Positions 3,150-64,000 of a stretch of 64,000 nucleotides of DNA are shown in pieces. A model generated the notes under the pieces. It did no database searches. It saw only the letters and a program-made list of their open reading frames with translations, and was not told the origin of the DNA. Location: NCBI RefSeq assembly GCF_032191835.1, contig NC_083239.1, positions 24,800,001-24,864,000 on the forward strand. Direction: 5' to 3'. A program made the translations under genes and the position numbers. Each line of letters starts with the position of its first letter. The first letter of the stretch is position 1. Source of the stretch: Heteronotia binoei (taxonomy: Eukaryota).

Positions 3150-3860
3150 AAGGTATGAGTAGGGTCTGTTTCCTTCTTTCTCCCCCCTCCCTCCACACCA
3201 GTGTGCTTGCAAAGAAAAGTTTTACTCCAGTGGCATGTAAGACACAAAGTTTCCTTCACGCCAGGAGCTGGGTCTCTTTCTTCTTCCCTCCCCCCCCACC
3301 CCCCACCCCCATGTCTCTGTATTTGCAAATAAAAGTTTTACTCCAGTGGCACTTAAGATGCAAAGTTTCCTTCAAGCCAGGAGCTGGGTCTGTTCCTTCT
3401 TCCCTCCCCAACCCCCCCCTCTCTGTATTTGCAAATAAAAGTTTTACTCCAGTGGCACTTAAGATGCAAAGTTTCCTTCAAGCCAGGAGCTGGGTCTGTT
3501 CCTTCTTCCCTCCCCAACCCCCCCCTCTCTGTATTTGCAAATAAAAGTTTTACTCCAGTGGCACTTAAGATGCAAAGTTTCCTTCAAGCTAGGAGCTGCA
3601 TCTGTTTCCTTCTCCCCTTCCCCATGTTTCTGTGTTTACAAAGAAGTTTTACTGCAGTGGCACTGAAGTCACAGTTTCTTTCAAGCCAGAAGCCAGATCT
3701 TTTCCTTCTCTGCCCCCCCCCCCCCCCGTGTTTGCAAAGAAGTTTTATTGCAGTAGCTGGATCTGTTTCCTTCTTCCCTCCCCCCACCCCTCACGTTTGT
3801 GTTCGCAAAACTTCGTTTGAATCCAGTGGTACTTAAAACGAAGAAAGTTTTCTTCAAGGT
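3150..3860. repeat. 106-bp minisatellite, about 6-7 copies
   Basis: TTTGCAAATAAAAGTTTTACTCCAGTGGCACTTAAGATGC recurs at 3322, 3428, 3534 (period 106), with degenerate copies on both sides. Confidence 0.85.
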
Positions 3861-7451: not shown

Positions 7452-8725
7452 TGGTGCATTCACACAACACTAAATACTACGCTTTACATCCAGATTTTTA
7501 CTGTGTAAGGCCGAGGTCAAACGCACATAAACTGACGAGATGGGCATGGATGAAAGCCAGATGCATGTCGGATTTTATGCGGTTGTCCAAACATCAGCAT
7601 CTGGCAATGGTCGTTGGCTCATTTGTGTCCCGAACTGCCACGACTGAGACGCAGACTTTTTTTATAGTACATTAAATCCGGAATAAGAATGCTTCCGACG
7701 ACTCCTGTGTGTACTTTCTATGTTTGAACGCTCCACTGTAGCCGACTCGTTGCAAGCGCACATCCGCTTCCCTGCGAGAGCCCACTCCAAATGATATCAT
7801 TGCGCCAGCAATTGTTGACTCAGCCTTCCAACCTTCCGAGGTCGGTAAAATATGTACCCAGCTTGCTGGGGGAGTGGGGAAGTATAGATGACTGGGAAAG
7901 GCAATGGCAAACCACCCCATAAAAGGTCTGCCATGAAAACTTTGTGAAAGCAGCATCACCCCAGAGTCGAAAATGACTGGTGCTTGCACAGGGGACCTTT
8001 CCTAAATGGGGGGGGGGAGGCAGATTTCCCACCTTTGCTGTCTCCCTGCCAGGGGAGGAAGATGACCCACCTTTGCCGTCTCCCCGCCAGGCGGAGAGAC
8101 AGCAAAGAGAGTTGCCGTACCCCCCCCCATTTAAACACCACAGCGGGGTGCTTAAAGGGGGGGAGAAAGATCACCCACCTTTTCTGTCTCCCTGCCAGGC
8201 AGAGAGACAGCAAAGAGAGCTGCCATGCTCCCCCCCCCCCATTTAAACACCACGGTGGGGTGTTTAAATGGAGGGGGGAGGAAGATCACCCACCTTTGCT
8301 GTCTCCCTGCCAGACAGAGAGACAGCAAAGAGAGTTGCCGTGCTCCCCCACCCATTTAAACACCACGGTGGGGTGTTTAAATGGGGTGGGGAGGAAGATC
8401 TCCCATCTTTGCTGCCCACCTTTTCTGGCACCTTTTAAAAAAAAAGCCATGCAAAATATCCCACGTACTGCGCTTGCGCAGGTGTGGAATGCCATCTCAA
8501 AAAATGAGGTCCGGTTGAGACCTCTGATCAACCAGCGACGGGACCAACACTGCTTAGAACTGAAGGATGGAGAATGTCTGATGAGGAAATTCATTGTAAA
8601 AAAACTGCAGGGTATAATAGTGACGGGTTAGGGATGGATTTAATGGTGAGTGTGACCTCGGCCTAAGAATAGCAAAAAAAAATCCGTATGAAAAACGCAT
8701 TATTTAGTGTAGTGTGGATGCACCA
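7452..8725. mobile_element. Non-autonomous PIF/Harbinger-type DNA transposon in MYCBP intron 3, containing a Sauria SINE segment and tandem hairpin repeats
   Basis: About 70-bp imperfect TIRs TGGTGCATTCACACAACACTAAATA.. / ..TATTTAGTGTAGTGTGGATGCACCA; 3-bp TSD ACA (7449-7451, 8726-8728); related ends at about 32216-32540 and 51960-52065. Confidence 0.75.
7813..8000 (+). mobile_element. Sauria SINE (3' part)
   Basis: GTTGACTCAGCCTTCCA..GGCAATGGCAAACCACCCC..ACTGGTGCTTGCACAGGGGAC; other copies at 11808-12032 (-), 18712-18945 (+), 49094-49390 (-). Confidence 0.85.
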
Positions 8726-34905: not shown

Positions 34906-35070
34906 GACCAATTTCGCACTAGACTTTTAATTCTGGTTTAGCCCTGTCCTCAAACTGACATTCTACACTAGAATAATAGAATCAGAGAAACCAACTCTAT
35001 GATTTTAGTGTAGAATGTCAGTTTAGAGACAGGGCTAAACCAGGATTAAAGGTCTAGTGCGAAATTGGGC
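34906..35070. mobile_element. Foldback MITE (Harbinger-like)
   Basis: GACCAATTTCGCACTAGAC...GTCTAGTGCGAAATTGGGC; near-complete palindrome; left-half relative at 58620-58835. Confidence 0.75.
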
Positions 35071-39960: not shown

Positions 39961-40505
39961 CCTAGAATCATAGAGTTGGAAGGGACCTCCAGGGCCATCT
40001 TGTCCAGTCCCCTGCACAATGCAGGAAACCCACAAATACCTACCCCAAATTCACAGGATCTTCATTGCTGTCAGATGGCCATCTAGCCTCTGTTTAAAAA
40101 CCTCCAAAGGAGAGCCCACCACCTCCCGAGGAAGCCTGTTCCACTGAGGAATCGCTCTAACAGTCAGGAAGTGCTTCCTAATGTTGGGCCGGAAACTCTT
40201 CTGATTTCATTTCAACCCACTGGTTCTGGTCCTATGTCCGGGGCCACAGAAAACAATTCCATACCATTCTCTATATGACAGCCCTTCAAGTACTTGAAGA
40301 TGGTGATCATATCACCTCTCAGCTGCCTCCTCTCCAGGCTAAACATCCCCAGCTCCTTCAACCTTTCCTCATAGGACTTGGTCTCCAGACCCCTCACCAT
40401 CTTCGTCGCCCTCCTCTGGACCTGTTCCAGCTTGTCTATATCCTTCTTAAAATGTGGTGCCCATAACTGAACACAATACTCCAGCTGAGGTCTTACCAGA
40501 GCAAA
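39961..40505 (-). mobile_element. CR1 LINE 3' fragment
   Basis: [40 protein letters not shown]-terminus and ATTCTATGATTCT 3' end; another CR1 at 45790-46245 (+). Confidence 0.9.
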
Positions 40506-48254: not shown

Positions 48255-50450
48255 CTGAACAAGGGTGGAAGGAAAAATCGCCAACAGAAGTTAGAGAGAC
48301 ACAAGAACAACCTTCACACATGTTAATACAGGTGTGATCTGCCCCATAAAGGAGCACAAGAACTCAAAGCTTCACTGAAAAACAAGTTAAACATGATTCA
48401 GATGAACACACAAACAATGTACTAGAATATAAAGCAAAACCAGGACAAAGATGCAGCTAAAACAATGAAACAAGAGCCCAATTTTTCTGAACTGCCTTCC
48501 AGTCAGCTGTTCATCAGCTGCTTCTCAAAGACATGGGCCGATTCTGCATTAGCCTTTGTCCTGGTCTTGTTCTCAGTTCTCAAGTTTGTGTGGGGCAGGG
48601 AGGAAGCAGGGAACACATGGCCTTGCTCCAGAGATGCCAATGCAGGATCCTGAAAAAAGAGCCACGCTGAGCAGCCCCGCACAGTAGGGAGGGAAGTGCT
48701 AAATGTGGAGACTGGATCCTTGTTCCCCATCAAGGTCCAAGAGGGCTGACCAACAACAGACCAAACTGGGGGGTTTGCACAACTGCATTCCCAACAGACT
48801 CCCCCAAATGCCTTCTGAAAGACTGGAAGGAGAAACAGTTTAGCCTTCTGGACACTGGTGGTGGAAAGTCACGGCTGACTTATGGGAACCGCAAAGACTT
48901 TTCAAGGCAAGAGATGAAGAGAGGTGGTTGGCCATTGCCTGCCTCTGCATTGTGACCCTGGACTTCCTCAGGGGTCTCCATCCAAATACAAGCCAGAGCC
49001 AGCCCTGCTTAGCTTCCGAGATCTGATGAGATCAGGCTAACCTGGACCCTCCAGATCAGGGCCTCTGGACATGAAGCACATGTTTTTAGGCAGTAAAGGT
49101 GAAAAAGGTAGTCCCTGTGCAAGCACCAGTCGTTTCCGACTCTGGAGTGACGTTGCTTTCACAACGTTTTCACGGCAGACTTTTTATGGGGTGGTTTGCC
49201 ATTGCCTTCCCCAGTCATCTACACTTCCCCTCCCAGCAAACTGGGTACTCATTTTGCCAACCTCGGAAGGATGGAAGGCTGAGTCAACCTTGAGTCGGCT
49301 ACCTGAACCCAGCTTCCGCCAGGATCAAACTCAGGTCGTGCGCAGAGCTTGGATTGCAGTACTGCAGCTGACCACTCTGTGCCACAGGGCTCCTTTTTAG
49401 GCAGTACCCCTAGGCAATACTGAATCAATGCAACCAATTCCTTCAGCCAATCCTAGAGTTATACCCTTCCAAGTCAACAGTCTTAGAACAGTGTAACAGT
49501 CAAGGGAATATCAGAAAGTATAGCATTCAACTTTTTAAAAAACTTACTACAGAAATCATATATGTAGTAGTAGTAATAAAATGTAACGCATAAATCCATT
49601 AGCCATTACAATTACAGCAGCTTACAAGTTAAAAGCAAAGACTCTAAAATGAAAACGTTCAAATTTAGATTATTTACAGTCTTAATTACATACAGCGTCC
49701 CCATATATGAAGAAATAAATATGGAGAATTATCTGTAGAACAGGGATATAACATTGTTATTCTTTGTACTCATATTCTGTACTACCCGGTTTGTGTTCAT
49801 AATAAAAAGGCTGTTAAAAATAGAAAGGAAGAATATAATTCTGCTTCGGATGGCACTACTTGGCACCAACGTTTTAGACAAATGGATGAGATGGTTCCCA
49901 GTAAGCGTAGACTGTGTCTTGTCAGTGTGACATTGTTAGCTGAAAGAAAATGAGGTGAATTCTCATGTTACTAATATTCTCTCAGCTAGAATGTTACTGA
50001 CTTGAGAGTTCTTTTGTTGTTGTTGTGTGTGTGGTTGTGTGTGTGCCCGTGCACATTTGGAAGTCATGGCGACCTCCAGTGATTCACCCCTACTGGAAGC
50101 CTGGAGGATATTCCAGGGATGTGGCTGAATACAGTCTGCCTCCACCTCCCGACTGCTGGCCAACCACCTCTGCCTTGAAAGCATTCGTCAGTTCTGGCCT
50201 GACAGCACTTACATACATATCACTCAGGATTAACTAGGGGCCAGCCATTATTATAGGGTCAAGGAAGGAAGCAGGTAGGCCTGAATCTTACTCCATTCAT
50301 GCCCCTGTTTTCTTACGTTTTCATTTTGGGAAACCACTTTGTGTTCAAAAGCATTTCTACAACTGCAGGAAAACAAACAACTGCTGAAGTCTTCCTGCAT
50401 GCTGGAAGTAAGTTGTGAATGGCAATGCAAAGGAACAGATGACCTCTTAC

Positions 50451-50508
50451 CTTTTGTCCGTTTTGCTTTGAGTACGTCGTCTTTTTCCAGCACACGTTTC
50501 CTGGGCAT
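50451..50508 (-). CDS. RCC1: RCC1 first coding exon (NLS tail MPRKRVLEKDDVLKAKRTK)
   Basis: Acceptor CTCTCAG at 50521, ATG at 50508, phase-1 donor G|GTAAGA matching exon 2 phase; basic bipartite NLS. Confidence 0.85.
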
Positions 50509-53049
50509 GTTTCCTTAACACTGAGAGGTGTGGGAGGAAAAAAGGTAAAGGGTTCTTTTTAAAAGAGTGGATTGGCCAAAGTTGATTTAGGAGACGTAAA
50601 CCTCACTATGCCACTGAAAAACAGATCACTCAAGATCCCTCAACTATGAAACTACTGGGTTATAGTGTTAAATTAGGATCCCCGCAGTCATGATGCTTGC
50701 ATGGGGACCTAGTTTACATAAGGAGGAAAGGGCTGTGGCTCAGTGGCAAACCCTCTGCTTTGCATGCAAAAGCTTCCAGGTTCAGCCTCTGGCATTTCCA
50801 GTTAAAAGGATCAAGTAGAAGGTGATGGGAAAGATTTCTCCCTGAGACCCTGGACAGCCACTGCCAGTCCAAGTAGACAATACTGACCTTGATGGACTGA
50901 TTCAGTATAAAGATGCTTCATGTTTTCAAGATTTTTTTAAAATAAAAAAAACCAGCATCAAAACAGTAATCCAAAAAAGAAGAGAGTTCTAGACAAACGT
51001 CAAACAGTAACAAAAAACTTCATTCAATCAAGGGATCAACAGGGAAAACTCAACAGAATAAAACATGGTCTCTGGGGACATGAAAGCTACAAGAACCCAA
51101 GCTCCAAATGTGAGGATAGAGCATCCATCCAATTTTTATCTCCCCTTTCCACCAAAAAGTTCAAGACGACTGCATATGCAGTCCTCCTCTCTTCCATTTT
51201 ATGATCACAACTCTGCAAGGTAGGCAAGGCTGAGAGTGACTGGCCTAAAGTCCACTACCTATTCTAATTGATCCTAATTCAGCACAATAACCCAATAGAT
51301 CCAGGTGGGTAGCCATGTTGGTCTGAAACAACAGAACAAAATTTGAGTCCTGTGTCACCTTTAAGACCAACAAAGTTTAATTCAGGGTATAAACTTCTGT
51401 GTGCACACACACTTCTTCAGATACAGTGAAACGGAAGTTACCAGTCCAAACATATAGAGGGTGAACACCAAATTAGCATGAAACATAATGATGGTGTTTA
51501 ACAGACGCAAGGACCAAACAGGAATAACAAGCTTAGTTTATATGGTTACTACTTATTTGTATTCTTTTGGGGGGGGCAGTGGATAAAGTGAAGCAAAATA
51601 TATATATAACATATTGGAGACTGGAGTGTAAATGTACCCTTAATTGTGGAAGTAATTAACTGAGACCCTGTTGTTCCACTCCACTGTCTCCTCTCAAGCA
51701 CGGAGAGAATTAACAGCATCCTTTTCTTTAAGGTAGGGTGACTGTCAATATTATGTCTCCTCTGTCACCAGACCAGAGAAATACGTTTCAGTCTGCCATT
51801 CCAAATTACATTACATTCTACTATTCATTACATTACAATCACTATTCCAATCTACTATTCTAACCACTCTGCTAACTGCTCTGAAAAGGGTGTTTTTGGC
51901 TAAAGGGAACTATCAAAATGTATTTTGCTCATGAACAATCATTGCAAAAATAAAAGTCAAAGGGTGTTTTTGCACACCTCGACTATTTGCAAGTGGATTT
52001 TGCTATTCTTCCACAGTAAAAATCCAGTTGCAAAGCACATTATTTTGTGGGTGTGAACGCACCCAAAATCTGGTGCTTCCACATGCTTATTTATTGTAAA
52101 CCAAATGTTTTTGGCTTCTCATTTTGAGAGTCTAAATGAGGACGTTTTAAAAGTGTAATGCACCACATCATTTCTTAGGCAGTTTGCCATAGCATCTGCC
52201 AAAAGAGGAGCATTGTTATACATTATATTCATCGCTATTCCCAGGACCAGCTGTTCAGTCATCTCAGCAACTTGGTGGCATTTGGAAAAACAGAGCATAA
52301 GAGGAATATGAGAAACTGTTAAAACAAGGAGAAAAGAAAAATGCTCCACATTGTTCAATCAAGGGATCACCAGCCTGGGAAGACATTCAAATCCCTCTAT
52401 CCATCCGGTCCACTCACTATAGCTTACCTCACTAAGGCTGTTGTAAAAATTAAATAGGAAAAGGACATATGTACCACCCCCAGCTCCACTGAACAAAGGT
52501 GTGATTTAAAATATTTGTGTGTGATGACTGAGAGAGATATACAGATATAGATATATAATGGCAGGCCTCCCCAGATACACAGAAAAATATTACTTTGTAA
52601 GTTAACCCAAAGAAAAAGAAAGGAAATCCTGGTCTGCTGAGGCTAAAAAATGATCCAGAAGGGCATGCTGATAGTGCTCAGCCACAGTAGTTAAATGGAA
52701 CCTCCAAGTTCAGAAGCAGCATATCTCTGAATCCTAAATGCTGCATACAAGCAAATGGAGGTTTCTTGCCTTCACACCTGGTTTCTGAGATAACTAAAAC
52801 AAGTTGTCCTACAGAGTAAAGCCACTTTGATTTGTCTTCTCCAGCTGGCAGCTGCCCTTTAAATCTAAGAGAGGGATTTCTTCCCCTCTCCCCATTCCGA
52901 GACCTTTTCAGCTGGAAACTGATTAGATTTTGTCCCACAGCAAAAAAAAAAAAAAAAATCACAGGAACCCTCCCGGCTCTGGGACGATCATGACTAATGT
53001 TACTGTTTGCATTTATACAAATAATCTAGATAGCTAATAGCACTCCATC

Positions 53050-54050
53050 CGGTTTACATGAGAAGGCTCCCGTGCAGAGCGCTACCCGATCCGGATCTGC
53101 AAATGTCTTCAAGCCCTTCCTCGGGGTTCCATTACCGGGGGGGGGGGGGAATTCCCGTTCCTCTCCAATCATGCTTTCACCCCTTCCCGGTTATTTTTTT
53201 TACCCTGCAAGAAACACATACCATGCGCCGCGCGGCATCACCGCCCCGGCAGCTGAGCACTGCAACCCCCCGCCCCAAATACCACCCCCATTTCCATCGC
53301 ACTCCCAAGGAAAATCGCCCGGATTTGAATTTCCCGCGCTGGCGCCGTAGCGCTCATCCTCCCTTTCCCCACCGCGGCGAGAGTTACCCGGACAGGGAGA
53401 ACAGGCAGAGCCGGCGGACCGGGCGCGACGGACGGGCCAGCCTCTGCCCACCGAACGCTCGGAGCCCGCACTTGCTCTGCTCGCCCCGCCCACTTGGAAC
53501 CCGAACTGGTTACTCCGCGTTCGACCCCTGGAACGTCCAGAGGCCACAGTTCCAAACCACGTGGGGGACTACTCGGCCGAGGCCCTCAAGCAACTTAGAT
53601 CGATCTACGGAATCCGCCCCGCGCCTCCCTTTACGAACAGCTAAATCCCTCCGGTCTATCCCTGCCCCCAACCACACCACACCACATCCAGTGTAAAACA
53701 GCGGGGGGCACGTACCTTGCTTTATTCAACCCCCTTCCCTCAAAGTCTGGCAAGTCTTCTCCCAATGCCCCCTGGAGTCTGGATTTCTTAGGAGCATGCG
53801 CACTAGCAGCCCCGGCGCGGACACCATTGGCTGTCGGAAGAGGAAAAAAATTAATCCTCTGTCGCACGCCTACTAGCGGCCGCTCAGAAAACTACTCTTC
53901 CCTACCACTGTTATAAGGTTTGAAATTCAATCCCGCCCCTTGCGGAAGGCGTGTAAGAGTCACCCCAAGGCAATTGGAGGCCGCTGCCTGGCTTGTATAC
54001 TTTTTTCAGGGGCTGCTTCCTTATTGGCCCTGCTCTACTCCTCCTGTCAT
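53050..54050 (-). promoter_or_regulatory. RCC1 CpG-island promoter with non-coding exon 1 ending at 53716
   Basis: Donor AAG|GTACGT at 53715; NRF1-like TGCGCATGC about 53794-53802; ATTGG/CCAAT boxes about 53826, 53973, 54023. Confidence 0.65.
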
Positions 54051-54319
54051 TAACCTACCGAGCATCAATAAACTAGGAACCAAGGATACCGAGAGCTCCG
54101 CTGCGGTTTTTCTTCCCCCACTGCACATTGCAGACCTTCCTTCCTTTCTTTGATAGACTCAGGCTCCTCGTTCAGAATCTTTCTTTATACATGCTTCCAC
54201 GAAAAGAAAGACCCATTGTGCTTAACTCGGGGAGGGGGGAGGCCATTCCAAAGCAAGAACATGTGTGATTGGCGTTGCACCGTTATCTAATTAAAACTTT
54301 TAGGGTCTGGGTAAAAGTC

Positions 54320-57300
54320 GGATCTACACGGATCTTCATGAATTCATATGATTTTTACATTGAAATGAAATCAAACCACTTTAATCCTGTAGATTCTGTT
54401 TTAGACTATAGGCAGGACCACAAAAATCATGCCTCCACGAATTCGTGGCGCCTCAGCAGTGCAAAAACTGGCTTCCAAAGCACGGATCCTCATGAATTCA
54501 TATGATTTTTATGGTGAAATGAAATCAAACCACCATCATGTTGTAGATCCTCTCTTAGACTATAGGCAGCACCAGAAAAATCATGCCTCCACGAATTGGT
54601 GGCGCCACAGCACTGAAAAAACATGTTTCCAAACCACGGATCCTCATGGATCCTCATGATTTTTGCTTTGGGCCACCACAAGATAACCAGCCAATCACAT
54701 ATCATGTCCATGGGCAGATGTTGGACCACAGAAATCGTGGATCCACGGCTTCGTGGCAGCACCAGGGACCAAAAACTTACTTTTGGACCACGGATCCTCA
54801 TGGATCCATGTGATTTTTGCTTCGGATCCCCCCAAGCCATCCATCCAGTCACATATCATGTCCATGGGCACAGTTTACACCACAGAAATCATGGATCCAC
54901 GGCTTCGTGGCAGCGCCAGGGACCAAAAACTTGCTTTTGGACCACGGATCCTCATGGATCCACGTGATTTTTGCCTTGGATCCCCCCAAGACGTCCATCC
55001 AGTCATATATCATGTCCATGGGCACAGTTTACATCACAGAAATCATGGATCCACGGCTTCGTGGCAGCGCCAGGGACCAAAAACTTGCTTTTGGACCACG
55101 GATCCTCATGGATCCACATGATTTTTGCCTTGGATCCCCCCAAGCCATCCATCCAGTCATATATTATGTCCATGGGCACAGTTTACACCACAGAAATCAT
55201 GGATCCACGGCTTCGTGGCAGCGCCAGGGACCAAAAACTTGCTTTTGGACCACGGATCCTCATGGATACACATGATTTTTGCCTTGGATCCCCCCAAGCC
55301 ATCCATCCAGTCATATATTATGTTCATGGGCACAGTTTACACCACAGAAATCATGGATCCACGGCTTCGTGGCAGCGCCAGGGACCAAAAACTTGCTTTT
55401 GGACCACGGATCCTCATGGATCCACATGATTTTTGCCTTGGATCCCCCCAAGCCGTCCATCCAGTCATATATAATGTCCATGGGCACAGTTTACACCACA
55501 GAAATAATGGATCCACGGCTTCGTGGCAGCGCCAGGGACCAAAAACTTGCTTTTGGACCACGGATCCTCATGGATCCACATGATTTTTGCCTTGGATCCC
55601 CCCAAACCGTCCATCCAGTCATGTATCATGTCCATGGGCACAGCTTACACCACAGAAATCATGGATCCACGGCTTCGTGGCAGCGCCAGGGACCAAAAAC
55701 TTGCTTTTGGACCACGGATCCTCATGGATCCACATGATTTTTGCCTTGGATCCCCCCAAGCCATCCATCCAGTCATATATCATGTCCATGGGCACAGTTT
55801 ACACCACAGAAATCATGGATCCACGGCTTCGTGGCAGCGCCAAAGACCAAAAACTTGCTTTTGGACAACGGATCCTCATGGATCCACATGATTTTTGCCT
55901 TGGATCCCCCCAAGCCATCCATCCAGTCATATATCATGTCCATGGGCACAGCTTACACCACAGAAATCATGGATCCACGGCTTCGTGGCAGCGCCAGGGA
56001 CCAAAAACTTGCTTTTGGACCACGGATCCTCATGGATCCACATGATTTTTACCTTGGATCCCCCCAAGCCATCCATCCAGTCATATATCATGTCCATGGG
56101 CACAGTTTACACCACAGAAATCATGGATCCACGGCTTCGTGGCAGCGCCAGGGACCAAAAACTTGCTTTTGGACCACAGATCCTCATGGATCCACATGAT
56201 TTTTGCCTTGGATCCCCCCAAGCCATCCATCCAGTCATATATTATGTCCATGGGCACAGCTTACACCACAGAAATCATGGATCCACGGCTTCGTGGCAGC
56301 GCCAGGGACCAAAAGCTTGCTTTGGACCACGGATCCTCATGGATCCACATGATTTTTGCCTTGGATCCCCCCAAGCCATCCATCCAGTCATATATCATGT
56401 CCATGGGCACAGTTTACACCACAGAAATCATGGATCCACGGCTTCGTGGCAGCGCCAGGGACCAAAAACTTGCTTTTGGACCACGGATCCTCATGGATAC
56501 ACATGATTTTTGCCTTGGATCCCCCCAAGCCATCCATCCAGTCATATATCATGTCCATGGGCACAGTTTACACCACAGAAATCATGGATCCACGGCTTTG
56601 TGGCAGCGCCAGGGACCAAAAACTTGCTTTTGGACCACAGATCCTCATGGATCCATGTGATTTCTGCTTCGGATCCCCCCAAGCCCTCCACACAGCCACA
56701 TATCATGTCCATGGGCAGAGTTTACACCACAGAAATCATGGCTCCATGGTTTCATGGCAGCGTCAGGGACCAAAAACTTGGTTTTGAATCACGGATCCTC
56801 ATGGATCCACATGATTTCTGCTTCAGATCCTCCCAAGCCCTCAATCGAATCACGTATCACGTCTATTAGCAGAGTCTAGAACACAGAAATCATAGATCCA
56901 CGGCTTCGTGGCAGTTCCAGAAATAAAAAACTTGGTTATAAACCATGGATCCTCATGGATCCACGTGATTTCTGCTTCGGAACCCCGCAAGCCCTCCATA
57001 CAGCCACATATCATGTCCATGGGGACAGTTTACACCACAGAAATTGTGGATCCACGGCTTTGTGGCAGCACCAGGGACCAAAAGCTTGCTTTTGGACCAC
57101 GGATCCTCATGGATCCATGTGATTTTTGCTTCGGATCCCCCCAAGCTCTCCACACAGCCACATATCATGTCCATGGGCACAGTTTAAACCACAGAAATCA
57201 TGGATCCACGGTTTCGTGGCAGCTTCAGGGACCAAAAACCTGCTTTTGGACCACGGATCCTCATGGATCCATGTGATTTCTGCTTCGGATCCCCCCAAGC

Positions 57301-58590
57301 CCTCCATACAGCCACATATCATGTCCATGGGCACAGTTTACACCACAGAAATCATGGCTCCATGGTTTCATGGCAGCGCCAGGGACCAAAAACTTGGTTT
57401 TGAATCACGGATCCTCACGGATCCACATGATTTCTGCTTCAGATCCTCCCAAGCCCTCAATGGAATCACGTACCATGTCCATGAGCAGAGTCTACAACAC
57501 AGAAATCATGGATCCACGGCTTCGTGGCAGCTCCAGAAATCAAAAACTTGGTTATAAACCACGGATCCTCATGAATCCACGTGATTTCTGCTTCGTAACC
57601 CCCCAAGCCCTCCATACAGTCACATATCATGTCCATGGCCAGAGTTTCCACCACAGAAATCATGGATCCACGGCTTCGTGGCAGCACCAGGGACCAAAAA
57701 CGTGCTTTTGGACCACGGATCCTCATGGATCCATGTGATTTCTGCTTCGGATCCCCCCAAGCCCTCCATACAGCCACATATCATGTCCATGGGCACAGTT
57801 TACACTACAGAAATCATGGATCCACGGTTTCGTGGCAGCACCAGGGACCAAAAACTTGCTTTTGGACCACGGATCCTCATGGATCCACATGATTTTTGCT
57901 TTGGAGCCCCCCAAGCCCTCCATCCAGTCGCATATCATGCCCATGGACAGAGTTTGCAGCACAGATATTGTGGATTCACAACTTCATGGCAGCGCCAGGG
58001 ACCAAAAACTTGCTTTTGGAACACAGATCCTCATGAATCCTCATGATTTTTACTTTGGGCCACCCCAAGCTCTCTATCCAATCACATATCATGTCCATGG
58101 GTAAAGCTTGCACCACAGAAATCATAGATACACAGCTTCGTGGCAGTGCCAGAGACCAAAAACTTGGTATTGGACCATGGATCCTCATGAATCCTCATGA
58201 TTTTTGCCTTGGATTCCCCCAACCTCACCATCCAATCGCATATCATGTCTATGGGCGGAGCTTCCACCACAAAAATCATGGATCCACGGCTTCGTGGCAG
58301 CACCATGGAAGAAGAACTTGGTTTTGCACCATGGATCCTCATGAGTTTACACCCTGGAAATCATGGATCCTTGGCATTGTGGCAACATCATGGAGCGAAA
58401 ACATGGCTTTGAAGCACATATCCTCATGGATCCTCATGATATCTGCATTGGCTCATCCCAAGCTCACCATCCAATCTCATGTTGTGTCCATGGAAAGAGC
58501 TTGCTCCACAGATATAATGGATCCATGGCTTCGTGGCAGCACCATGGATCCAGAACATGATTTTGAGGCACGGATCCTCATGGGTCCTCT
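54320..58590 (+). repeat. 154-bp satellite array, arm 1 (about 28 monomers)
   Basis: Consensus ACCACGGATCCTCATGGATCCACATGATTTTTGCCTTGGATCCCCCCAAGCCATCCATCCAGTCATATATCATGTCCATGGGCACAGTTTACACCACAGAAATCATGGATCCACGGCTTCGTGGCAGCGCCAGGGACCAAAAACTTGCTTTTGG; period 154 also seen in ORF starts 54817/54971/55125/55279. Confidence 0.97.
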
Positions 58591-58676
58591 TATGAAAAGA
58601 TAGGAGTCTTGGAAAACAATTTCACAGTTGACCTTTATTCCTGGTTTAGCAGTGTCCCCAAATTGACATTCTACAC

Positions 58677-58811
58677 CAGGGGTGGACAACGATAGCTCTC
58701 CAGAAGTTTTTTGCCTACAACTCCCATCAGCCCCAGCCATCAGCCATGCTTGCTGGGCTGATGGGAGTTGTAGGCAAAAAACTTCTGGAGAGCTACTGTT
58801 GGCCACCCCTG
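58677..58811. mobile_element. Foldback hAT MITE nested in a truncated Harbinger-like MITE (58620-58835)
   Basis: CAGGGGTGGACAAC / GTTGGCCACCCCTG; perfect TSD TTCTACAC. Confidence 0.88.
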
Positions 58812-58836
58812 TTCTACACTAAAATAATAGAATTGT

Positions 58837-59410
58837 ATAGAATCATAGAGTTGGAAGGGACCTCCAGGGTCATCTAGTCCAACTCCCTGCACAATGCAGG
58901 AAACTCACAAACACCTTCCCCAACATTCACAGGATCTTCATTGCTGTCAGATGCCCATCTAGCCTCTGTTGAAAAACCTCCAGGGAAGGAGAGCCCACCA
59001 CCTCCCGAGGAAGCCTGTTCCACTGAGGACCGCTCTAACGGTCAGGAAGTTCTTCCTCATGTTGAGCTGGAAACTCTTTTCATTTAATTTCAACCCATTG
59101 GTTCTGGTCCCACCTTCTGGGGCCACAGAAAACAATTCCACACCATCCGCTATATGACAGCCCTTGAAGTACTTGAAGATGGTGATCATATCACCCCTCA
59201 GTTGTCTCCTCTCCAAGCTAAACAGACCGAGCTCCTTCAATCTTTCCTCATAGGACTTGGTCTCCATGTCCCTCATCATCTCCATTGCCCTCCTCTGGAC
59301 ATATTTCGTTATTAACCTGTGGTGCCCCAAAATGAACGCAGTAGTCTGGTAGGGTCCTAACCACAGCAGAGTAAAGTGACACAATCACTGAACATGATGT
59401 GGACACTTGG
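58837..59410 (-). mobile_element. CR1 LINE 3' fragment
   Basis: [39 protein letters not shown]; same subfamily as 39961-40505. Confidence 0.9.
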
Positions 59411-59479
59411 TTTTTGGTGATAAATTGTGTTTGCCTTGTGTGGAATTGTTTCCTGTGGCCCTGGAAGGTAGGAGCAGAA

Positions 59480-59735
59480 GCGGTTGAGATCAAAAGTGGT
59501 TTCGGCTCAACATCAGGAAGAATTTCCTGATCATTAGCAATTTCTCAGTTGAACAGGCTTCCTCCTCGGGACGTGGTGGGCTCTCCTTCCTTGGACGTGT
59601 TTAAACAGAGGCTAGATGGCCATCTGACAGCAATGAAGATCCTGTGAGTTTAGGGGGAGATGTTTGTGAGTTTCCTGCATTGTGCAGGGGGTTGGACTAG
59701 ATGACCCTGGAGGTCCCTTCCAACTCTATGATTCC
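59480..59735 (+). mobile_element. CR1 LINE 3' end, opposite orientation to the 58837 copy
   Basis: ..GGACTAGATGACCCTGGAGGTCCCTTCCAACTCTATGATTCC 3' terminus. Confidence 0.88.
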
Positions 59736-60339
59736 ATTATTCTAATTTGGTGGCCTCTATCTAGTGAGCAAGATGTTTTGAAGTCAAAGATAAGACCATT
59801 ACAATATCTGCCTTGGATAGTTTGCAACTCAGTGGCATCAGAAAGTTCAGAATGCAGTTATTTACAGTGAAAGGTACGGACATGATTTTGATTTCTCATG
59901 TTACTGTGGTGTCCTTGATAAGGTAGAGACATTACAGATTTTTTTTGTTTGGTCATCCTGTAGACATTGGTGTGATGTCATAATGCACAAGCCTCAAAGT
60001 AGCTGAAGCAGTGTTTGGCATCTTGGCAGTGTTCTGAGGTTTTCGTGGGTTATTCTGTGGTCATGGACGTGCTGTGTGATGTGAAAGAAACCTCAGGGGG
60101 ACCATGCATGATGAGCCCAACTATTCAAAAATGAAAAGTCACAGAACTCATGAAGATTAAGTGTTTCAAAGTATGTAACCACACTGACATCATACAAGGT
60201 ACTCGAAATCCAATTTGTATTTTGCAAACGCTGGACATAGACGTGACATCTGGATGGATAATGAGTGTGGTGAACAATAAAATTGTGAATGTGTGATAGT
60301 TGTTCAGCAAGCTATGACCATGGATGTTACATGTGGTAT

Positions 60340-63300
60340 AATGTCGAGTTTTCCTTGATCCAACGCAAATAACTTTAAGATCAAGAAGGATCCGCATTTC
60401 AAAACCATATTTTGGCTCCTTGTTACCGGCACAAAGCCATGGACCTGTCATTCCTGTGGTGCAAGGTCTGCCAAAAATCATGGTGGAATCCAACGCAAAA
60501 ATCATGTGGATCCATGAAGATCCATGGTCCAAAAGCAAGTTTTGGTCCCTGGCGCTGCCACGAAGCTGTGGATCGACCAATTCTGTGGTGAAAACTCTGC
60601 CCATGGACATGATATATGACTGTATGGAGGGCTTGGGGGAATCCAAGGCAAAAATCAAGTGGATCCATGAGGATCGGTGGTTCATAACCAAGTTTTTGAT
60701 TTCTGGCGCTGCCACGAAACTGTGGATCCATGATTTCTGTGGTGGAAACTCTGCCCATGGACATGATATGTGATTGCATGGAGGGCTTGGGGGTTCCGAA
60801 GCAGAAATCACATGGATCCATGAGGATCCGTGGTCCAAAAGCAAGTATTTGGTCCCTGGCGCTGCCACGAAGCCACGGATCCACGATTTCTGTGGTGCAA
60901 ACTATGCCCATGGACATGACATGTGGCTGTATGGAGGGCTTGGGGGGGTCCAAAGCAAAAATCACGTGGATCCATGAGGATCCATGGTCCAAAAGCAAGT
61001 TTTTGGTCGCTGGCGCTGCCACGAAGACATGGATCCACGATTTCTGTGTTGCACACTCTGCTCATGGACATGATATGTGACTGGATGGAGGGTTTGGGGG
61101 GATCCAAAGCAGAAATCATGTGGATCCATGAGGATCCGTGGTCCAAAAGCAAGTTTTTGGTCCCTGGCGCTGCCACGAAACCGTGGATCCATGATTTCTG
61201 TGGTGTAAACTGTGCCCATGGACATTATATGTGACTGGATGGAGGGCTTGGAGGGATCCGAAGCGAAAATCACGTGGATCCATGAGGATCCGTGGTCCAA
61301 AAGCAAGTTTTTGGTCCGTGGCGCTGCCACGAAGCCGTGGATCCACGATTTCTGTGGTGCAAACACTGCCCATGGACAAGATAAGTGACTGGATGGAGGG
61401 TTTGAGGGATCCAAAGCAGAAATCTTGGATCCATGGTCCAAAATCATGTTTTTGGTCCCTGGTGCTGCCACGAAGATGTGGATCCACGATTTCTGTGGTG
61501 CAGACTCTGCTCAAGGACATGATATGTGACTGGATGGAGGGTTCGAGGGATCCAAAGCAGAAATCATGTGGATCCATGAGGATCCGTGGTCCAAAATCAA
61601 GTTTTTGGTCTCTGGCGCTGCCACGAAGACGTGGATCCATGATTTCTGTAGTGCAGACTCTGCTCATGGACATGATATGTGATGGGTTTGAGGGCTTGGG
61701 GAATCCAAAGCAGAAATCATGTGGATCCATGAGGATCCGTGGTCCAAAAGCAAGTTTTTGGTCCCTAGCGCTGCCACGAAGCCGTGGATCCATGATTTCT
61801 GTGGTGCAAACTCTGCCCATGGACATGATATGTGACTGAATGGAGGGTTGGAGGCATCCAAGGCAGAAATCATGCGGGTCAATGAGGATCCGAGGTCCAA
61901 AATCAAGTTTTTGGTCCCTGGCACTGCCACGAAGCTGTGGATCCACATTTTCTGTGGTGTAAACACTGCCTATGGACATGATAACTGCCTGGATGGAGGG
62001 TTTGGGGGGATCCGAAGCAGAAATCACATGGAACCATGAGGATCCGTGGTCCAAAAGCAAGTTTTTGGTCCCTGGCGCCGCCACGAAGCCATGGATCCAC
62101 GATTTCTGTGGTGCAAACACTGCCCATGGACATGATAAGTGACTGGATGGAGGGTTTGAGGGATCCGAAGCAGAAATCATGTGGATCCATGAGGATCCGT
62201 GGTCCAAAATCATGTTTTTGGTCCCTGATGCTGACACGAAGACGTGGAGCCATGATTTTTGTGGTGCAGACTCTGCTCATGGACATGATATGTGACTGGA
62301 TGGAGGGCTTGGGGGGATCCGAAGCAGAAATCATGTGGATCCATGAGGATCCGTGGTCCAAAATCATGTTTTTGGTCCCTGGCGCTGCCACGAAGAAAAG
62401 GATCTACGATTTCTGTGGCGCAGACTCTGCTCATGGACATGATATGTGACTGGATGGAGGGTTCGAGGGATCCGAAGCAGAAATCATGTGGGTCCAAGAG
62501 GATCCGTGCTCCGAAATCATGTTTTTGGTCCCTGGCGCTACACGAAGACGTGGATCCATGATTTCTGTGGTGCAGACTCTGCTCATGGACATGATATGTG
62601 ATGGGTTTGAGGGCTTGGGGGATCCAGAGCAGAAATCATGTGGATCCATGAGGATCCGTGGTCCAAAAGCAAGTTTTTGGTCCCTGGCGCTGCCACGAAG
62701 CCGTGGATCCATGATTTCTGTGGTGTAAACTGTGCCCATGGACATGATATATGACTGGATGGATGGCTTGGGGGGATCCAAGGCAAAAATCATGTGGATC
62801 CATGAGGATCCGTGGTCCAAAAGCAAGTTTTTGGTCCCTGGCGCTGCCACGAAGCCGTGGATCCATGATTTCTGTGGTGTAAACTGTGCCCATGGACATG
62901 ATATATGACTGGATGGATGGCTTGGGGGGATCCAAGGCAAAAATCATGTGGATCCATGAGGATCCGTGGTCCAAAGCAAGTTTTTGGTCCCTGGCGCTGC
63001 CACGAAGCCGTGGATCCATGATTTCTGTGGTGTAAACTGTGCCCATGGACATGACATATGACTGGATGGATGGCTTGGGGGGATCCAAGGCAAAAATCAT
63101 GTGGATCCATGAAGATCCGTGGTCCAAAAGCAAGTTTTTGGTCCCTGGCGCTGCCACGAAGCCGTGGATCCATGATTTCTGTGGTGTAAACTGTGCCCAT
63201 GGACATGATATATGACTGGATGGATGGCTTGGGGGGATCCAAGGAAAAAATCATGTGGATCCATGAGGATCCGTGGTCCAAAGCAAGCTTTTGGTCCCTG

Positions 63301-64000
63301 GCGCTGCCACGAAGCCGTGGATCCATGATTTCTGTGGTGTAAGCTGTGCCCATGGACATGATATATGACTGGATGGATGGCTTGGGGGGATCCAAGGCAA
63401 AAATCATGTGTATCCATGAGGATCCGTGGTCCAAAAGCAAGTTTTTGGTCCCTGGCGCTGCCACGAAGCCGTGGATCCATGATTTCTGTGGTGTAAACTG
63501 TGCCCATGGACATGATATATGACTGGATGGATGGCTTGGGGGGATCCAAGGCAAAAATCATGTGGATCCATGAGGATCCGTGGTCCAAAGCAAGCTTTCG
63601 GTCCCTGGCGCTGCCACGAAGCCGTGGATCCATGATTTCTGTGGTGTAAGCTGTGCCCATGGACATAATATATGACTGGATGGATGGCTTGGGGGGATCC
63701 AAGGCAAAAATCATGTGGATCCATGAGGATCCGTGGTCCAAAACCAAGTTTTTGGTCCCTGGTGCTGCCACGAAGCCGTGGATCCATGATTTCTGTGGTG
63801 TAAACTGTGCCCATGGACATGATATATGACTGGATGGATGGCTTGGGGGGGATCCAAGGCAAAAATCACGTGGATCCATGAGGATCCGTGGTCCAAAAGC
63901 AAGTTTTTGGTCCCTGGCGCTGCCACGAAGCCGTGGATCCATGATTCCTGTGGTGTAAGCTGTGCCCATGGACATGATATATGACTGGATGGATGGCTTG
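60340..64000 (-). repeat. 154-bp satellite array, arm 2 (inverted; runs off the window)
   Basis: Reverse complement of the arm-1 monomer; diverged near 60.3-62.6 kb, homogeneous from about 62.6 kb. Confidence 0.97.

What the first reader, a model, noticed from the sequence alone, without database searches (positions are those of the whole stretch)
54320..64000. Satellite polarity switch: two convergent arms of one 154-bp satellite form a multi-kb inverted repeat around a 1.75-kb spacer
Seen: arm 1 (54.3-58.6 kb) is on the plus strand and arm 2 (60.3 kb to window end) is its reverse complement. Inference: an inversion or fold-back event inside the array; such a structure can recombine arm-to-arm, flip the spacer, or produce long dsRNA if transcribed through.
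Basis: seen in the sequence. Interest (0 to 1): 0.7.

Follow-up and report, generated by a model that had tools for sequence, protein, structure and literature searches.

The report
Gecko satellite fold-back beside RCC1 promoter
Two runs of one 154-base gecko satellite really do face each other around a short, transposon-filled centre next to the RCC1 gene, and this is most likely an old, dead "foldback" jumping gene of a family this scan has already met elsewhere in the same genome, not a flip inside a large satellite array.

Summary
Arm 1 (54327-58591, + strand, 28 monomers) and arm 2 (60040/60400-64000, - strand, at least 24 monomers, cut by the window end) are reverse complements built from one 154-bp satellite.

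- This is not a polarity switch inside a big array. Arm 1 is a bounded 4.3-kb block that ends sharply in unique DNA about 0.2-0.3 kb from a CpG island upstream of RCC1.
- The 1.45-1.8-kb "spacer" is mostly later insertions: two MITE pieces and two CR1-like LINE tails. The arms were once no more than about 330 bp apart.
- Both arms carry the same two layers. An outer block differs 0-3% from one consensus. An inner block differs 6-25% and decays toward the centre. No monomer-by-monomer mirror register exists, so there is no sign of a recent inversion or copied palindrome.
- Contigs from four other public runs cross both inner junctions, including samples 1-4% diverged. A mis-join at those junctions is unlikely and the layout is old.
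- Transcription, dsRNA and spacer flipping are not shown.

The satellite is homologous to the published UhenSat05-153 of Uroplatus henkeli. Earlier notes of this scan describe the same 154-bp-armed foldback transposons, with 9-bp target duplications, on other DNA of this genome. I could not test the right end or a target duplication here.

The parts
54320..54327 (.). Outer (left) boundary of the structure. Unique flank ends here and satellite begins.
   Evidence: Sequence read. The 206 nt to the left show no significant satellite similarity on either strand (best z 3.4, within the shuffle maximum).
54327..54632 (+). Two end-variant ('T') monomers, a distinct outer module.
   Evidence: About 85% alike to each other and 38-40% diverged from the main consensus. 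The divergence is patterned: columns 1-32 are 87-90% identical, the central 57 columns only 35-42%. They keep 3 and 2 of 4 CpGs.
54633..54786 (+). Intermediate monomer, 13% from the consensus.
54787..56633 (+). Arm 1 outer 'Y' block: 12 near-identical monomers.
   Evidence: 0-3.3% from the consensus, CpGs 46 of 48 intact, 96.8% identity within the block.
56635..58591 (+). Arm 1 inner 'O' block, decaying toward the centre. Includes a half monomer at 58343-58411 and a 23-nt stub at 58569-58591.
   Evidence: 7.8-18.8% diverged, then 22-25% for the last two. Shows CpG to TpG/CpA decay.
58592..60039 (.). Middle domain (spacer). About 1.12 kb is inserted TE sequence and about 0.33 kb is unassigned.
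58617..58676 (.). Piece of a MITE whose full palindromic copy lies at 34909-35067.
   Evidence: blastn 83-85% over 60 nt to both arms of that copy.
58672..58816 (.). 145-bp palindromic MITE.
   Evidence: 62-nt arms 92% complementary with a 21-nt loop. Depth in reads is thousands of times the unique level.
58837..59420 (-). 5'-truncated CR1-like LINE 3' end.
   Evidence: ORF 58959-59384 (-) carries the ...[21 protein letters not shown]... motif, known to me from CR1 ORF2 C-termini. Pfam found nothing and the protein atlas gave only a weak lead. An 89% copy lies at 39963-40421. Loose read ends with many different flanks sit at 58837.
59438..59737 (+). Second CR1-like 3' end, inverted relative to the first.
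   Evidence: Inverted repeat of 175 nt at 93%, continuing at 82-88% to about 300 nt. Loose read ends at 59734.
59738..60039 (.). Unassigned single-copy centre sequence.
   Evidence: No satellite similarity and no match elsewhere in the window. Unique-level depth, covered by one contig in each of three runs.
60040..60399 (-). Barely recognisable innermost monomers of arm 2.
   Evidence: nhmmer hits at 60040-60103 (E 8e-3), 60212-60265 (E 8e-3) and 60281-60394 (E 8e-7), all minus strand.
60400..62661 (-). Arm 2 inner 'O' block with a 307-bp dimer periodicity.
   Evidence: 24.8% diverged for the first monomer, then 5.8-15.2%. Shares derived bases with arm 1's O block.
62663..64000 (-). Arm 2 outer 'Y' block, at least 9 monomers, cut by the window end.
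   Evidence: 0-2.6% from the same consensus as arm 1's Y block. Three monomers are identical to A56326. Between-arm identity is 97.2%.

Best explanation
This is an old, immobile foldback-type inverted-repeat element of roughly 10 kb. The window cuts it inside the right arm.

Shown:
- Two convergent arms of a gecko 154-bp satellite homologous to UhenSat05-153.
- A distinct end module of two variant monomers at the outer left edge.
- A short non-coding middle domain.

Inferred:
- It is a non-autonomous copy of the foldback DNA-transposon family with 154-bp-repeat arms that this scan has noted elsewhere in this genome, of the FB/Tetris kind and probably mobilised in trans by a Mutator-like enzyme.
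- It landed next to the CpG-island promoter region upstream of RCC1.
- The centre later collected MITE and CR1-like insertions. The arms stayed insertion-free and kept evolving together: an older subfamily now lies inside and a near-identical younger block outside in both arms. That pattern fits arm-to-arm gene conversion and unequal exchange rather than a single inversion.

Today it probably does nothing beyond being a large inverted repeat able to form hairpins or cruciforms or to recombine.
For: - Inverted arms are real and far beyond chance.
- The outer edge is sharp, with a patterned end module that is not random decay.
- Arm 1 is only 4.3 kb and sits about 0.2-0.3 kb from a CpG island (GC 0.60-0.63, CpG o/e about 0.95). 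The first RCC1 coding exon lies on the minus strand at about 50.25-50.5 kb. This is a euchromatic, gene-side setting.
- The middle domain has no transposase-like ORF and is about 77% later TE insertions, so the arms were once no more than about 330 bp apart.
- Both arms share the same Y and O layers and the same rare variants.
- Two sequence blocks are kept across subfamilies and across gecko genera. A 34-nt block has 2 mismatches and a 21-nt block 1-3 mismatches to UhenSat05-153, with the same 53-nt offset and a period of 153 versus 154.
- Contigs from other samples cross arm1->centre (X1 58519-662, X3 58268-605, X8 58492-651) and centre->arm2 (X1 59699-60393, X2 59746-60247, X3 59760-60432). 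Divergence is 0.6-4%.
- The domain layout (end domain, tandem-repeat domains, middle domain, no ORF) matches the published foldback element Tetris (PMC4079207).
- Earlier scan notes, which I could not check, report 154/155-bp-armed foldbacks with 9-bp target duplications, one of 10.9 kb, and several beside promoters.
Against: - The right end lies beyond the window, so matching termini and a target-site duplication were not seen.
- I could not retrieve any other copy. The existence of a dispersed family rests on unverified earlier notes (searches were blank).
- The arms are not mirror copies monomer by monomer.
- The inner part looks older than the outer part, which a simple one-step insertion of a symmetric element does not predict.
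- No transposase is present here.
Confidence: 0.55

Rival explanations
1. In-place origin without transposition. A small local array of the satellite next to RCC1 underwent an inverted duplication, by fold-back priming at a break or by a replication template switch. This made a near-loopless palindrome. Each arm was then reshuffled by unequal exchange, and the arms were homogenised against each other by gene conversion.
For: - The arms were originally no more than about 330 bp apart, the typical geometry of fold-back inversions.
- The monomer contains short dyads that could prime fold-back.
- The layered old-inside, young-outside pattern and the decayed inner edges look like ordinary array dynamics.
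- No target duplication or second terminus was seen here.
Against: - No mirror register survives.
- The outer edge carries a distinct, non-decayed end module.
- Earlier notes report many dispersed copies of the same architecture with target duplications, which a one-off local event does not explain.
Confidence: 0.27
2. Two independent arrays. The left and right arrays were seeded separately, for example by two insertions of satellite-bearing DNA, and happen to face each other. The shared young block reflects input from a genome-wide master sequence.
For: - Diverged monomers are each closest to the Y consensus rather than to each other, so the tree is star-like.
- There is no colinearity between the arms.
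Against: - Both arms show the same order of layers, with sharp steps at about 2.0 and 2.3-2.6 kb from the centre.
- Both share the derived O-subfamily bases and rare Y variants.
- Both decay toward one common centre. This is too symmetric for independent events.
Confidence: 0.1
3. Assembly artefact. The two arrays are mis-joined inside the repeat-rich centre.
For: No read or contig spans arm-centre-arm. The unbridged stretches (about 58722-59172 and 59425-59699) are high-copy TE sequence, and no DNA run of the source animal was available.
Against: - Independent contigs from four runs in two studies cross both arm/centre junctions, and also 59172-59425, with 0-4% differences.
- A 1-kb TE is short for a mis-join in a modern long-read assembly (my inference).
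- The symmetric decay of both arms toward this centre would be an odd coincidence.
Confidence: 0.04

Closest known systems
Tetris foldback transposon and its TIR-220 satellite (Drosophila virilis; PMC4079207)
   Same: Long inverted arms built in domains: an outer flanking or end domain, then tandem repeats of satellite size. A variable non-coding middle domain and no ORF. The same repeat also exists as satellite arrays. Tetris has 8-10-bp target duplications.
   Different: - The host is a vertebrate.
- The arms are far longer: 4.3 kb with 28 monomers, versus up to 1.7 kb.
- The outer module here is itself a monomer variant.
- Target duplication, second terminus and copy number were not seen at this locus.
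Drosophila FB (foldback) elements and Galileo (from my own knowledge and the discussion in PMC4079207)
   Same: Inverted arms made of tandem subrepeats, arms of unequal length, and mostly non-coding copies mobilised in trans. They are known to promote inversions and rearrangements.
   Different: FB subrepeats are 10-31 bp rather than a nucleosome-sized 154 bp. No enzyme link is shown here.
UhenSat05-153 satellite of Uroplatus henkeli (PMC11049218, Table 1 and supplementary file 4)
   Same: Period 153 versus 154 bp. A 34-nt block has 2 mismatches and a 21-nt block 1-3 mismatches, in the same order and at the same 53-nt offset.
   Different: In U. henkeli it is reported as centromeric on all chromosomes and amplified on the W. 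The probe gives scattered signals in U. guentheri and Phelsuma laticauda. Here it forms a short gene-side inverted pair.
Strand switches inside centromeric satellite arrays and large palindromes kept alike by arm-to-arm conversion (my own knowledge)
   Same: One satellite in both orientations. The arms are kept similar, seemingly by exchange between inverted copies.
   Different: Arm 1 is a bounded 4.3-kb array in gene-rich DNA, not part of a large homogeneous array. The arms are not colinear copies.

Membership tests
Foldback-type DNA transposon (FB/Tetris-like) | Long terminal inverted arms composed of tandem subrepeats | tested here: met
   28 plus-strand and at least 24 minus-strand monomers of one 154-bp unit.
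Foldback-type DNA transposon (FB/Tetris-like) | Two matching outer termini | not testable with these tools
   The left end is sharp at 54320-54327 with a distinct end module. The right end lies beyond base 64000.
Foldback-type DNA transposon (FB/Tetris-like) | Target-site duplication (8-10 bp) | not testable with these tools
   This needs the right end. Only earlier scan notes report 9-bp duplications for other copies.
Foldback-type DNA transposon (FB/Tetris-like) | Several dispersed copies with different flanks | not testable with these tools
   There is no second copy in the window. Findings-by-sequence, metagenome, viral and protein-word searches were all blank. The claim rests on unverified notes.
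Foldback-type DNA transposon (FB/Tetris-like) | Middle domain, non-coding in non-autonomous copies | tested here: met
   The 1.45-kb centre holds only MITE and CR1-like pieces plus about 330 bp of unassigned DNA, with no transposase-like ORF.
UhenSat05-153 gecko satellite family | Same unit length and sequence homology along the unit | tested here: met
   154 versus 153 bp. Two published blocks match in 26 and 43 monomers respectively, against 0 expected by chance, with the same 53-nt offset. Full-length identity was judged by eye only, at about 70%.
Centromeric satellite array with an internal strand switch | Switch lies inside a long homogeneous array | tested here: not met
   Arm 1 is 4.3 kb and ends in unique DNA beside a CpG island and RCC1. 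The length of arm 2 is unknown.
Palindrome from a recent inverted duplication or inversion | Arms colinear in mirror register, with symmetric breakpoints | tested here: not met
   Old-block pairs are 82-85% identical at every shift. The Y block shows only an even/odd (dimer) effect.

The most novel reading that the evidence does not exclude
The two sequence blocks conserved between this satellite's subfamilies and the Uroplatus centromeric satellite UhenSat05-153 are binding sites for a foldback (Mutator-like) transposase. On this reading, foldback elements are the vehicle that seeds this satellite across gecko genomes, including centromeres and W chromosomes. Repeated cutting and repair at both termini would renew the outer monomers of both arms together, giving the symmetric young-outside, old-inside layering seen here.
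Probability: 0.15. Interest if true: 0.7.

Novelty: new member of a known kind. Interest (0 to 1): 0.4.

Why it matters
If the foldback reading holds, this copy adds a vertebrate case to the link between foldback transposons and satellite DNA, so far described mainly in flies and beetles. The satellite's relative is centromeric and W-amplified in another gecko genus. It also places a roughly 10-kb hairpin-capable inverted repeat within a few hundred bases of the promoter island of an essential single-copy gene, RCC1. That makes a natural test bed for how such structures are tolerated, silenced or recombined. As a single locus it is an example, not a discovery: the scan had already met this family on other DNA of the same genome.

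Tried and rejected
- Mirror-register test of the arms, old blocks and young blocks separately. No register stands out, so a recently copied palindrome is rejected.
- Extended palindrome including the CR1-like pair. The sequences between arm and CR1-like copy on the two sides share no homology, so the inverted CR1-like pair is better read as two insertions.
- Hidden satellite in the left flank, in 58592-58672 or in 59738-60040. None is significant.
- Other copies or relatives:
  - Exact-pattern scans of metagenome and viral contigs were blank.
  - The satellite's near stop-free 152-aa ORF was used as bait in the protein word search and gave no hit.
  - Notes for DNA beyond base 64000 cannot be asked for.
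- Paper search for monomer sub-sequences gave nothing. The homologue was found through the Uroplatus satellitome supplement.
- SINE-derived satellite origin (PMC10702118). No link to this monomer was found.
- Rfam found no family in 50-64 kb.
- The monomer fold is not exceptional, z -1.7.
- Transcription and dsRNA. The locus is present in three RNA-labelled libraries, but depth is flat at the unique-copy level and scales with genomic copy number over the TEs.
Full report
**Observation**

- Tandem Repeats Finder reports a 154-bp array at 54633-58343 (24.1 copies, 90% matches) and another at 60481-64000 (23 copies). The second one's consensus is the reverse complement of the first. Two divergent 154-bp units lie at 54327-54664.
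- GC skew flips sign between the arms.
- In a 13-mer dot-plot the 1-kb bins of the two arms share hundreds to about 4300 reverse-complement words and at most one forward word. Neither arm matches anything else in the window.
- A profile search delimits 28 plus-strand monomers (54327-58565, plus a 23-nt stub to 58591) and 24 minus-strand monomers (60400-63999). Three barely recognisable minus-strand remnants reach back to 60040.

**Anatomy of the arms**

I aligned all 52 monomers and compared each to the consensus of the most uniform ones.

| Layer | Arm 1 | Arm 2 | Divergence from consensus |
|---|---|---|---|
| End-variant ('T') monomers | 54327-54632 (two) | beyond the window, if present | 38-40% |
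| Intermediate | 54633-54786 | not seen | 13% |
| Outer 'Y' block | 54787-56633 (12 monomers) | 62663-64000 (at least 9) | 0-3.3% |
| Inner 'O' block | 56635-58326 (11 monomers) | 60529-62661 (14 monomers) | 6-19% |
| Innermost | 58343-58565 (one half and one full monomer) | 60400-60528 (one monomer) | 22-25% |
| Remnants | none | 60040-60399 | barely recognisable |

- In the Y blocks nearly all CpGs are intact.
- The step from Y to O takes one monomer in each arm: 1.3% to 11.8% at 56634, and 12% to 0% at 62662.
- O monomers in both arms share derived bases (alignment columns 31, 35, 37, 54, 67) and show CpG decay.
- Y monomers are as alike between arms (97.2%) as within them (96.8% and 97.6%). 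Three arm 2 monomers are identical to one in arm 1, and rare variants are shared.
- There is no monomer-by-monomer mirror register. Old-block pairs are 82-85% identical at every shift. The Y block shows only an even/odd effect that reflects a dimer periodicity.
- So the arms were not copied from each other recently as a palindrome, but they have evolved together layer by layer.

**The outer edge**

- No satellite similarity is detectable in the 206 nt left of 54327.
- The two end monomers are not decayed copies. They keep columns 1-32 at 87-90% and retain 3 and 2 of 4 CpGs. Their central 57 columns are unrelated to the main unit, at 35-42%.
- This looks like a distinct end module, comparable to the flanking domain of the foldback element Tetris.

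**The centre**

- 58672-58816 is a 145-bp palindromic MITE.
- 58617-58676 is a piece of another MITE. Its full palindromic copy is at 34909-35067.
- 58837 to about 59420 (minus strand) and 59438-59737 (plus strand) are two 5'-truncated 3' ends of a CR1-like LINE.
  - An ORF there carries the [21 protein letters not shown]-type motif that I know from CR1 ORF2 C-termini. Pfam gave nothing and the protein atlas only a weak lead.
  - A third copy lies at 39963-40421.
  - Reads show loose ends with many different flanks exactly at 58837 and 59734.
  - Reads also show 'goes back' joints of about 160-190 nt. These agree with earlier scan notes that CR1 tails form tandem arrays in this genome.
- The stretches between arm and CR1-like copy on the two sides share no homology, so the inverted CR1-like pair is not part of a larger palindrome.
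- Without the insertions the arms were no more than about 330 bp apart.
- Four insertions lie in the centre and none in at least 7.9 kb of arms. This suggests that the arms are turned over or purged while the centre is not (my inference).

**Is the join real?**

- No DNA run of the source animal was on offer. The best holders were three RNA-labelled 'metatranscriptomic' runs from one study and one small DNA-type run from another study.
- Their contigs cross arm 1 into the centre:
  - X1, 58519-58662, 1 difference
  - X3, 58268-58605
  - X8, 58492-58651, 2 differences
- Their contigs cross the centre into arm 2:
  - X1, 59699-60393, 4 differences
  - X2, 59746-60247
  - X3, 59760-60324 and 60295-60432
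- X1 and X3 also cover parts of 59172-59425.
- The contigs differ from the window by about 0.6% to 4%. The layout is therefore shared by animals that have diverged, and it is old.
- The only unbridged parts are high-copy TE sequence. No single molecule spans everything, so a mis-join is unlikely but not excluded.
- Presence in RNA libraries does not show transcription. Depth over unique parts is flat, and over the TEs it scales with genomic copy number, as DNA would. I had no second call to lay a silent control.

**Context**

- The first coding exon of RCC1 lies on the minus strand at about 50251-50508.
- A CpG island (GC 0.60-0.63, CpG o/e about 0.95) lies at about 52.9-54.1 kb. The left end of the structure is only 0.2-0.3 kb beyond it.
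- This is a short, bounded block in gene-rich DNA, not a switch inside a large satellite array.

**What the satellite is**

- The Uroplatus henkeli satellitome paper lists UhenSat05-153. It is centromeric on all chromosomes and amplified on the W in that species. The same probe gives scattered signals in two other gecko species (PMC11049218).
- A 34-nt block of its consensus matches 26 monomers here with 2-3 mismatches. A 21-nt block matches 43 monomers with 1-3 mismatches. Zero matches are expected by chance, and the 53-nt offset is the same.
- These blocks are also the best conserved columns among this locus's own subfamilies.

**Interpretation**

- Earlier notes of this scan, which are AI notes that I could not verify, describe foldback-type DNA transposons elsewhere in this same gecko genome. 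Their arms are runs of a 154/155-bp repeat. The notes report 9-bp target duplications, one 10.9-kb copy, one copy with an intact Mutator-like enzyme gene, and several copies beside promoters.
- What I can test fits that reading:
  - tandem-repeat arms
  - a distinct end module with a sharp edge
  - a small non-coding middle domain
  - a gene-side location
  - an expected total length near 10 kb if the arms are symmetric
- What I cannot test are the defining features of mobility. The second terminus, the target duplication and other copies all lie outside the window, and every route to other copies was blank.
- I therefore rate the foldback-transposon reading at about 0.55, an in-place inverted duplication at about 0.27, two independent arrays at about 0.1 and an assembly artefact at about 0.04.
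- The symmetric two-layer structure without colinearity is not fully explained by any of them. Arm-to-arm conversion with unequal exchange is the simplest account. Repair of transposase cuts at both termini, or nested insertion, are alternatives.

**Novelty**

- Foldback elements with satellite-like arms are well known in insects (PMC4079207).
- I found no report of them in squamates in the searchable library.
- The scan has already noted this family on other DNA of this genome.
- This locus is a new member of a known kind, of moderate interest.

Noticed in passing
window 52900-54100: A CpG island (GC 0.60-0.63, CpG o/e about 0.95) lies upstream of the first RCC1 coding exon (minus strand, about 50251-50508). 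It is probably the RCC1 promoter or a 5' non-coding exon. The foldback's left end lies only 0.2-0.3 kb beyond it, so divergent transcription from the island would enter arm 1.
   Followed up: partly
window 58837-59737, and 39963-40421: Two 5'-truncated CR1-like LINE 3' ends lie head-to-head, with 175-nt arms 93% complementary. In public runs the last roughly 160-190 nt of this tail also occur as head-to-tail copies ('goes back' joints), which agrees with earlier notes on CR1-tail satellites in this genome.
   Followed up: partly
window 58672-58816, 58617-58676 and 34909-35067: Small palindromic MITEs. One is a 145-bp hairpin element in the centre. Next to it lies a fragment of a second family, whose complete 160-bp palindromic copy lies near 35 kb.
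   Followed up: partly
window 54800-58050 (+) and 60400-63980 (-): The satellite's sense strand is almost free of stop codons, about one per three monomers. This gives a ladder of overlapping 122-373-aa ORFs. A word search with one 152-aa ORF found no protein relatives, so I read this as a composition effect and not as coding.
   Followed up: partly
window 58150-60700 in runs X1-X3: The best public holders of this non-genic stretch are three libraries labelled metatranscriptomic RNA-Seq, from samples whose unique sequence differs from the window by about 0.6%, 2.4% and 4%. Depth looks like genomic copy number, so these libraries may contain host DNA.
   Followed up: no
window 3207-3624 and 8052-8414: Two other short tandem arrays: a 106/212-bp unit with about 3 copies, and a 115-bp unit with 3.2 copies in a GC-rich stretch. 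Both are unrelated to the 154-bp satellite.
   Followed up: no
window 11-12 kb, 18-19 kb, 49-50 kb; 43-47 kb: Dispersed repeats are shared between these 1-kb bins in direct and inverted orientation, with 36-56 shared 13-mers. They are presumably further interspersed elements in and around RCC1.
   Followed up: no
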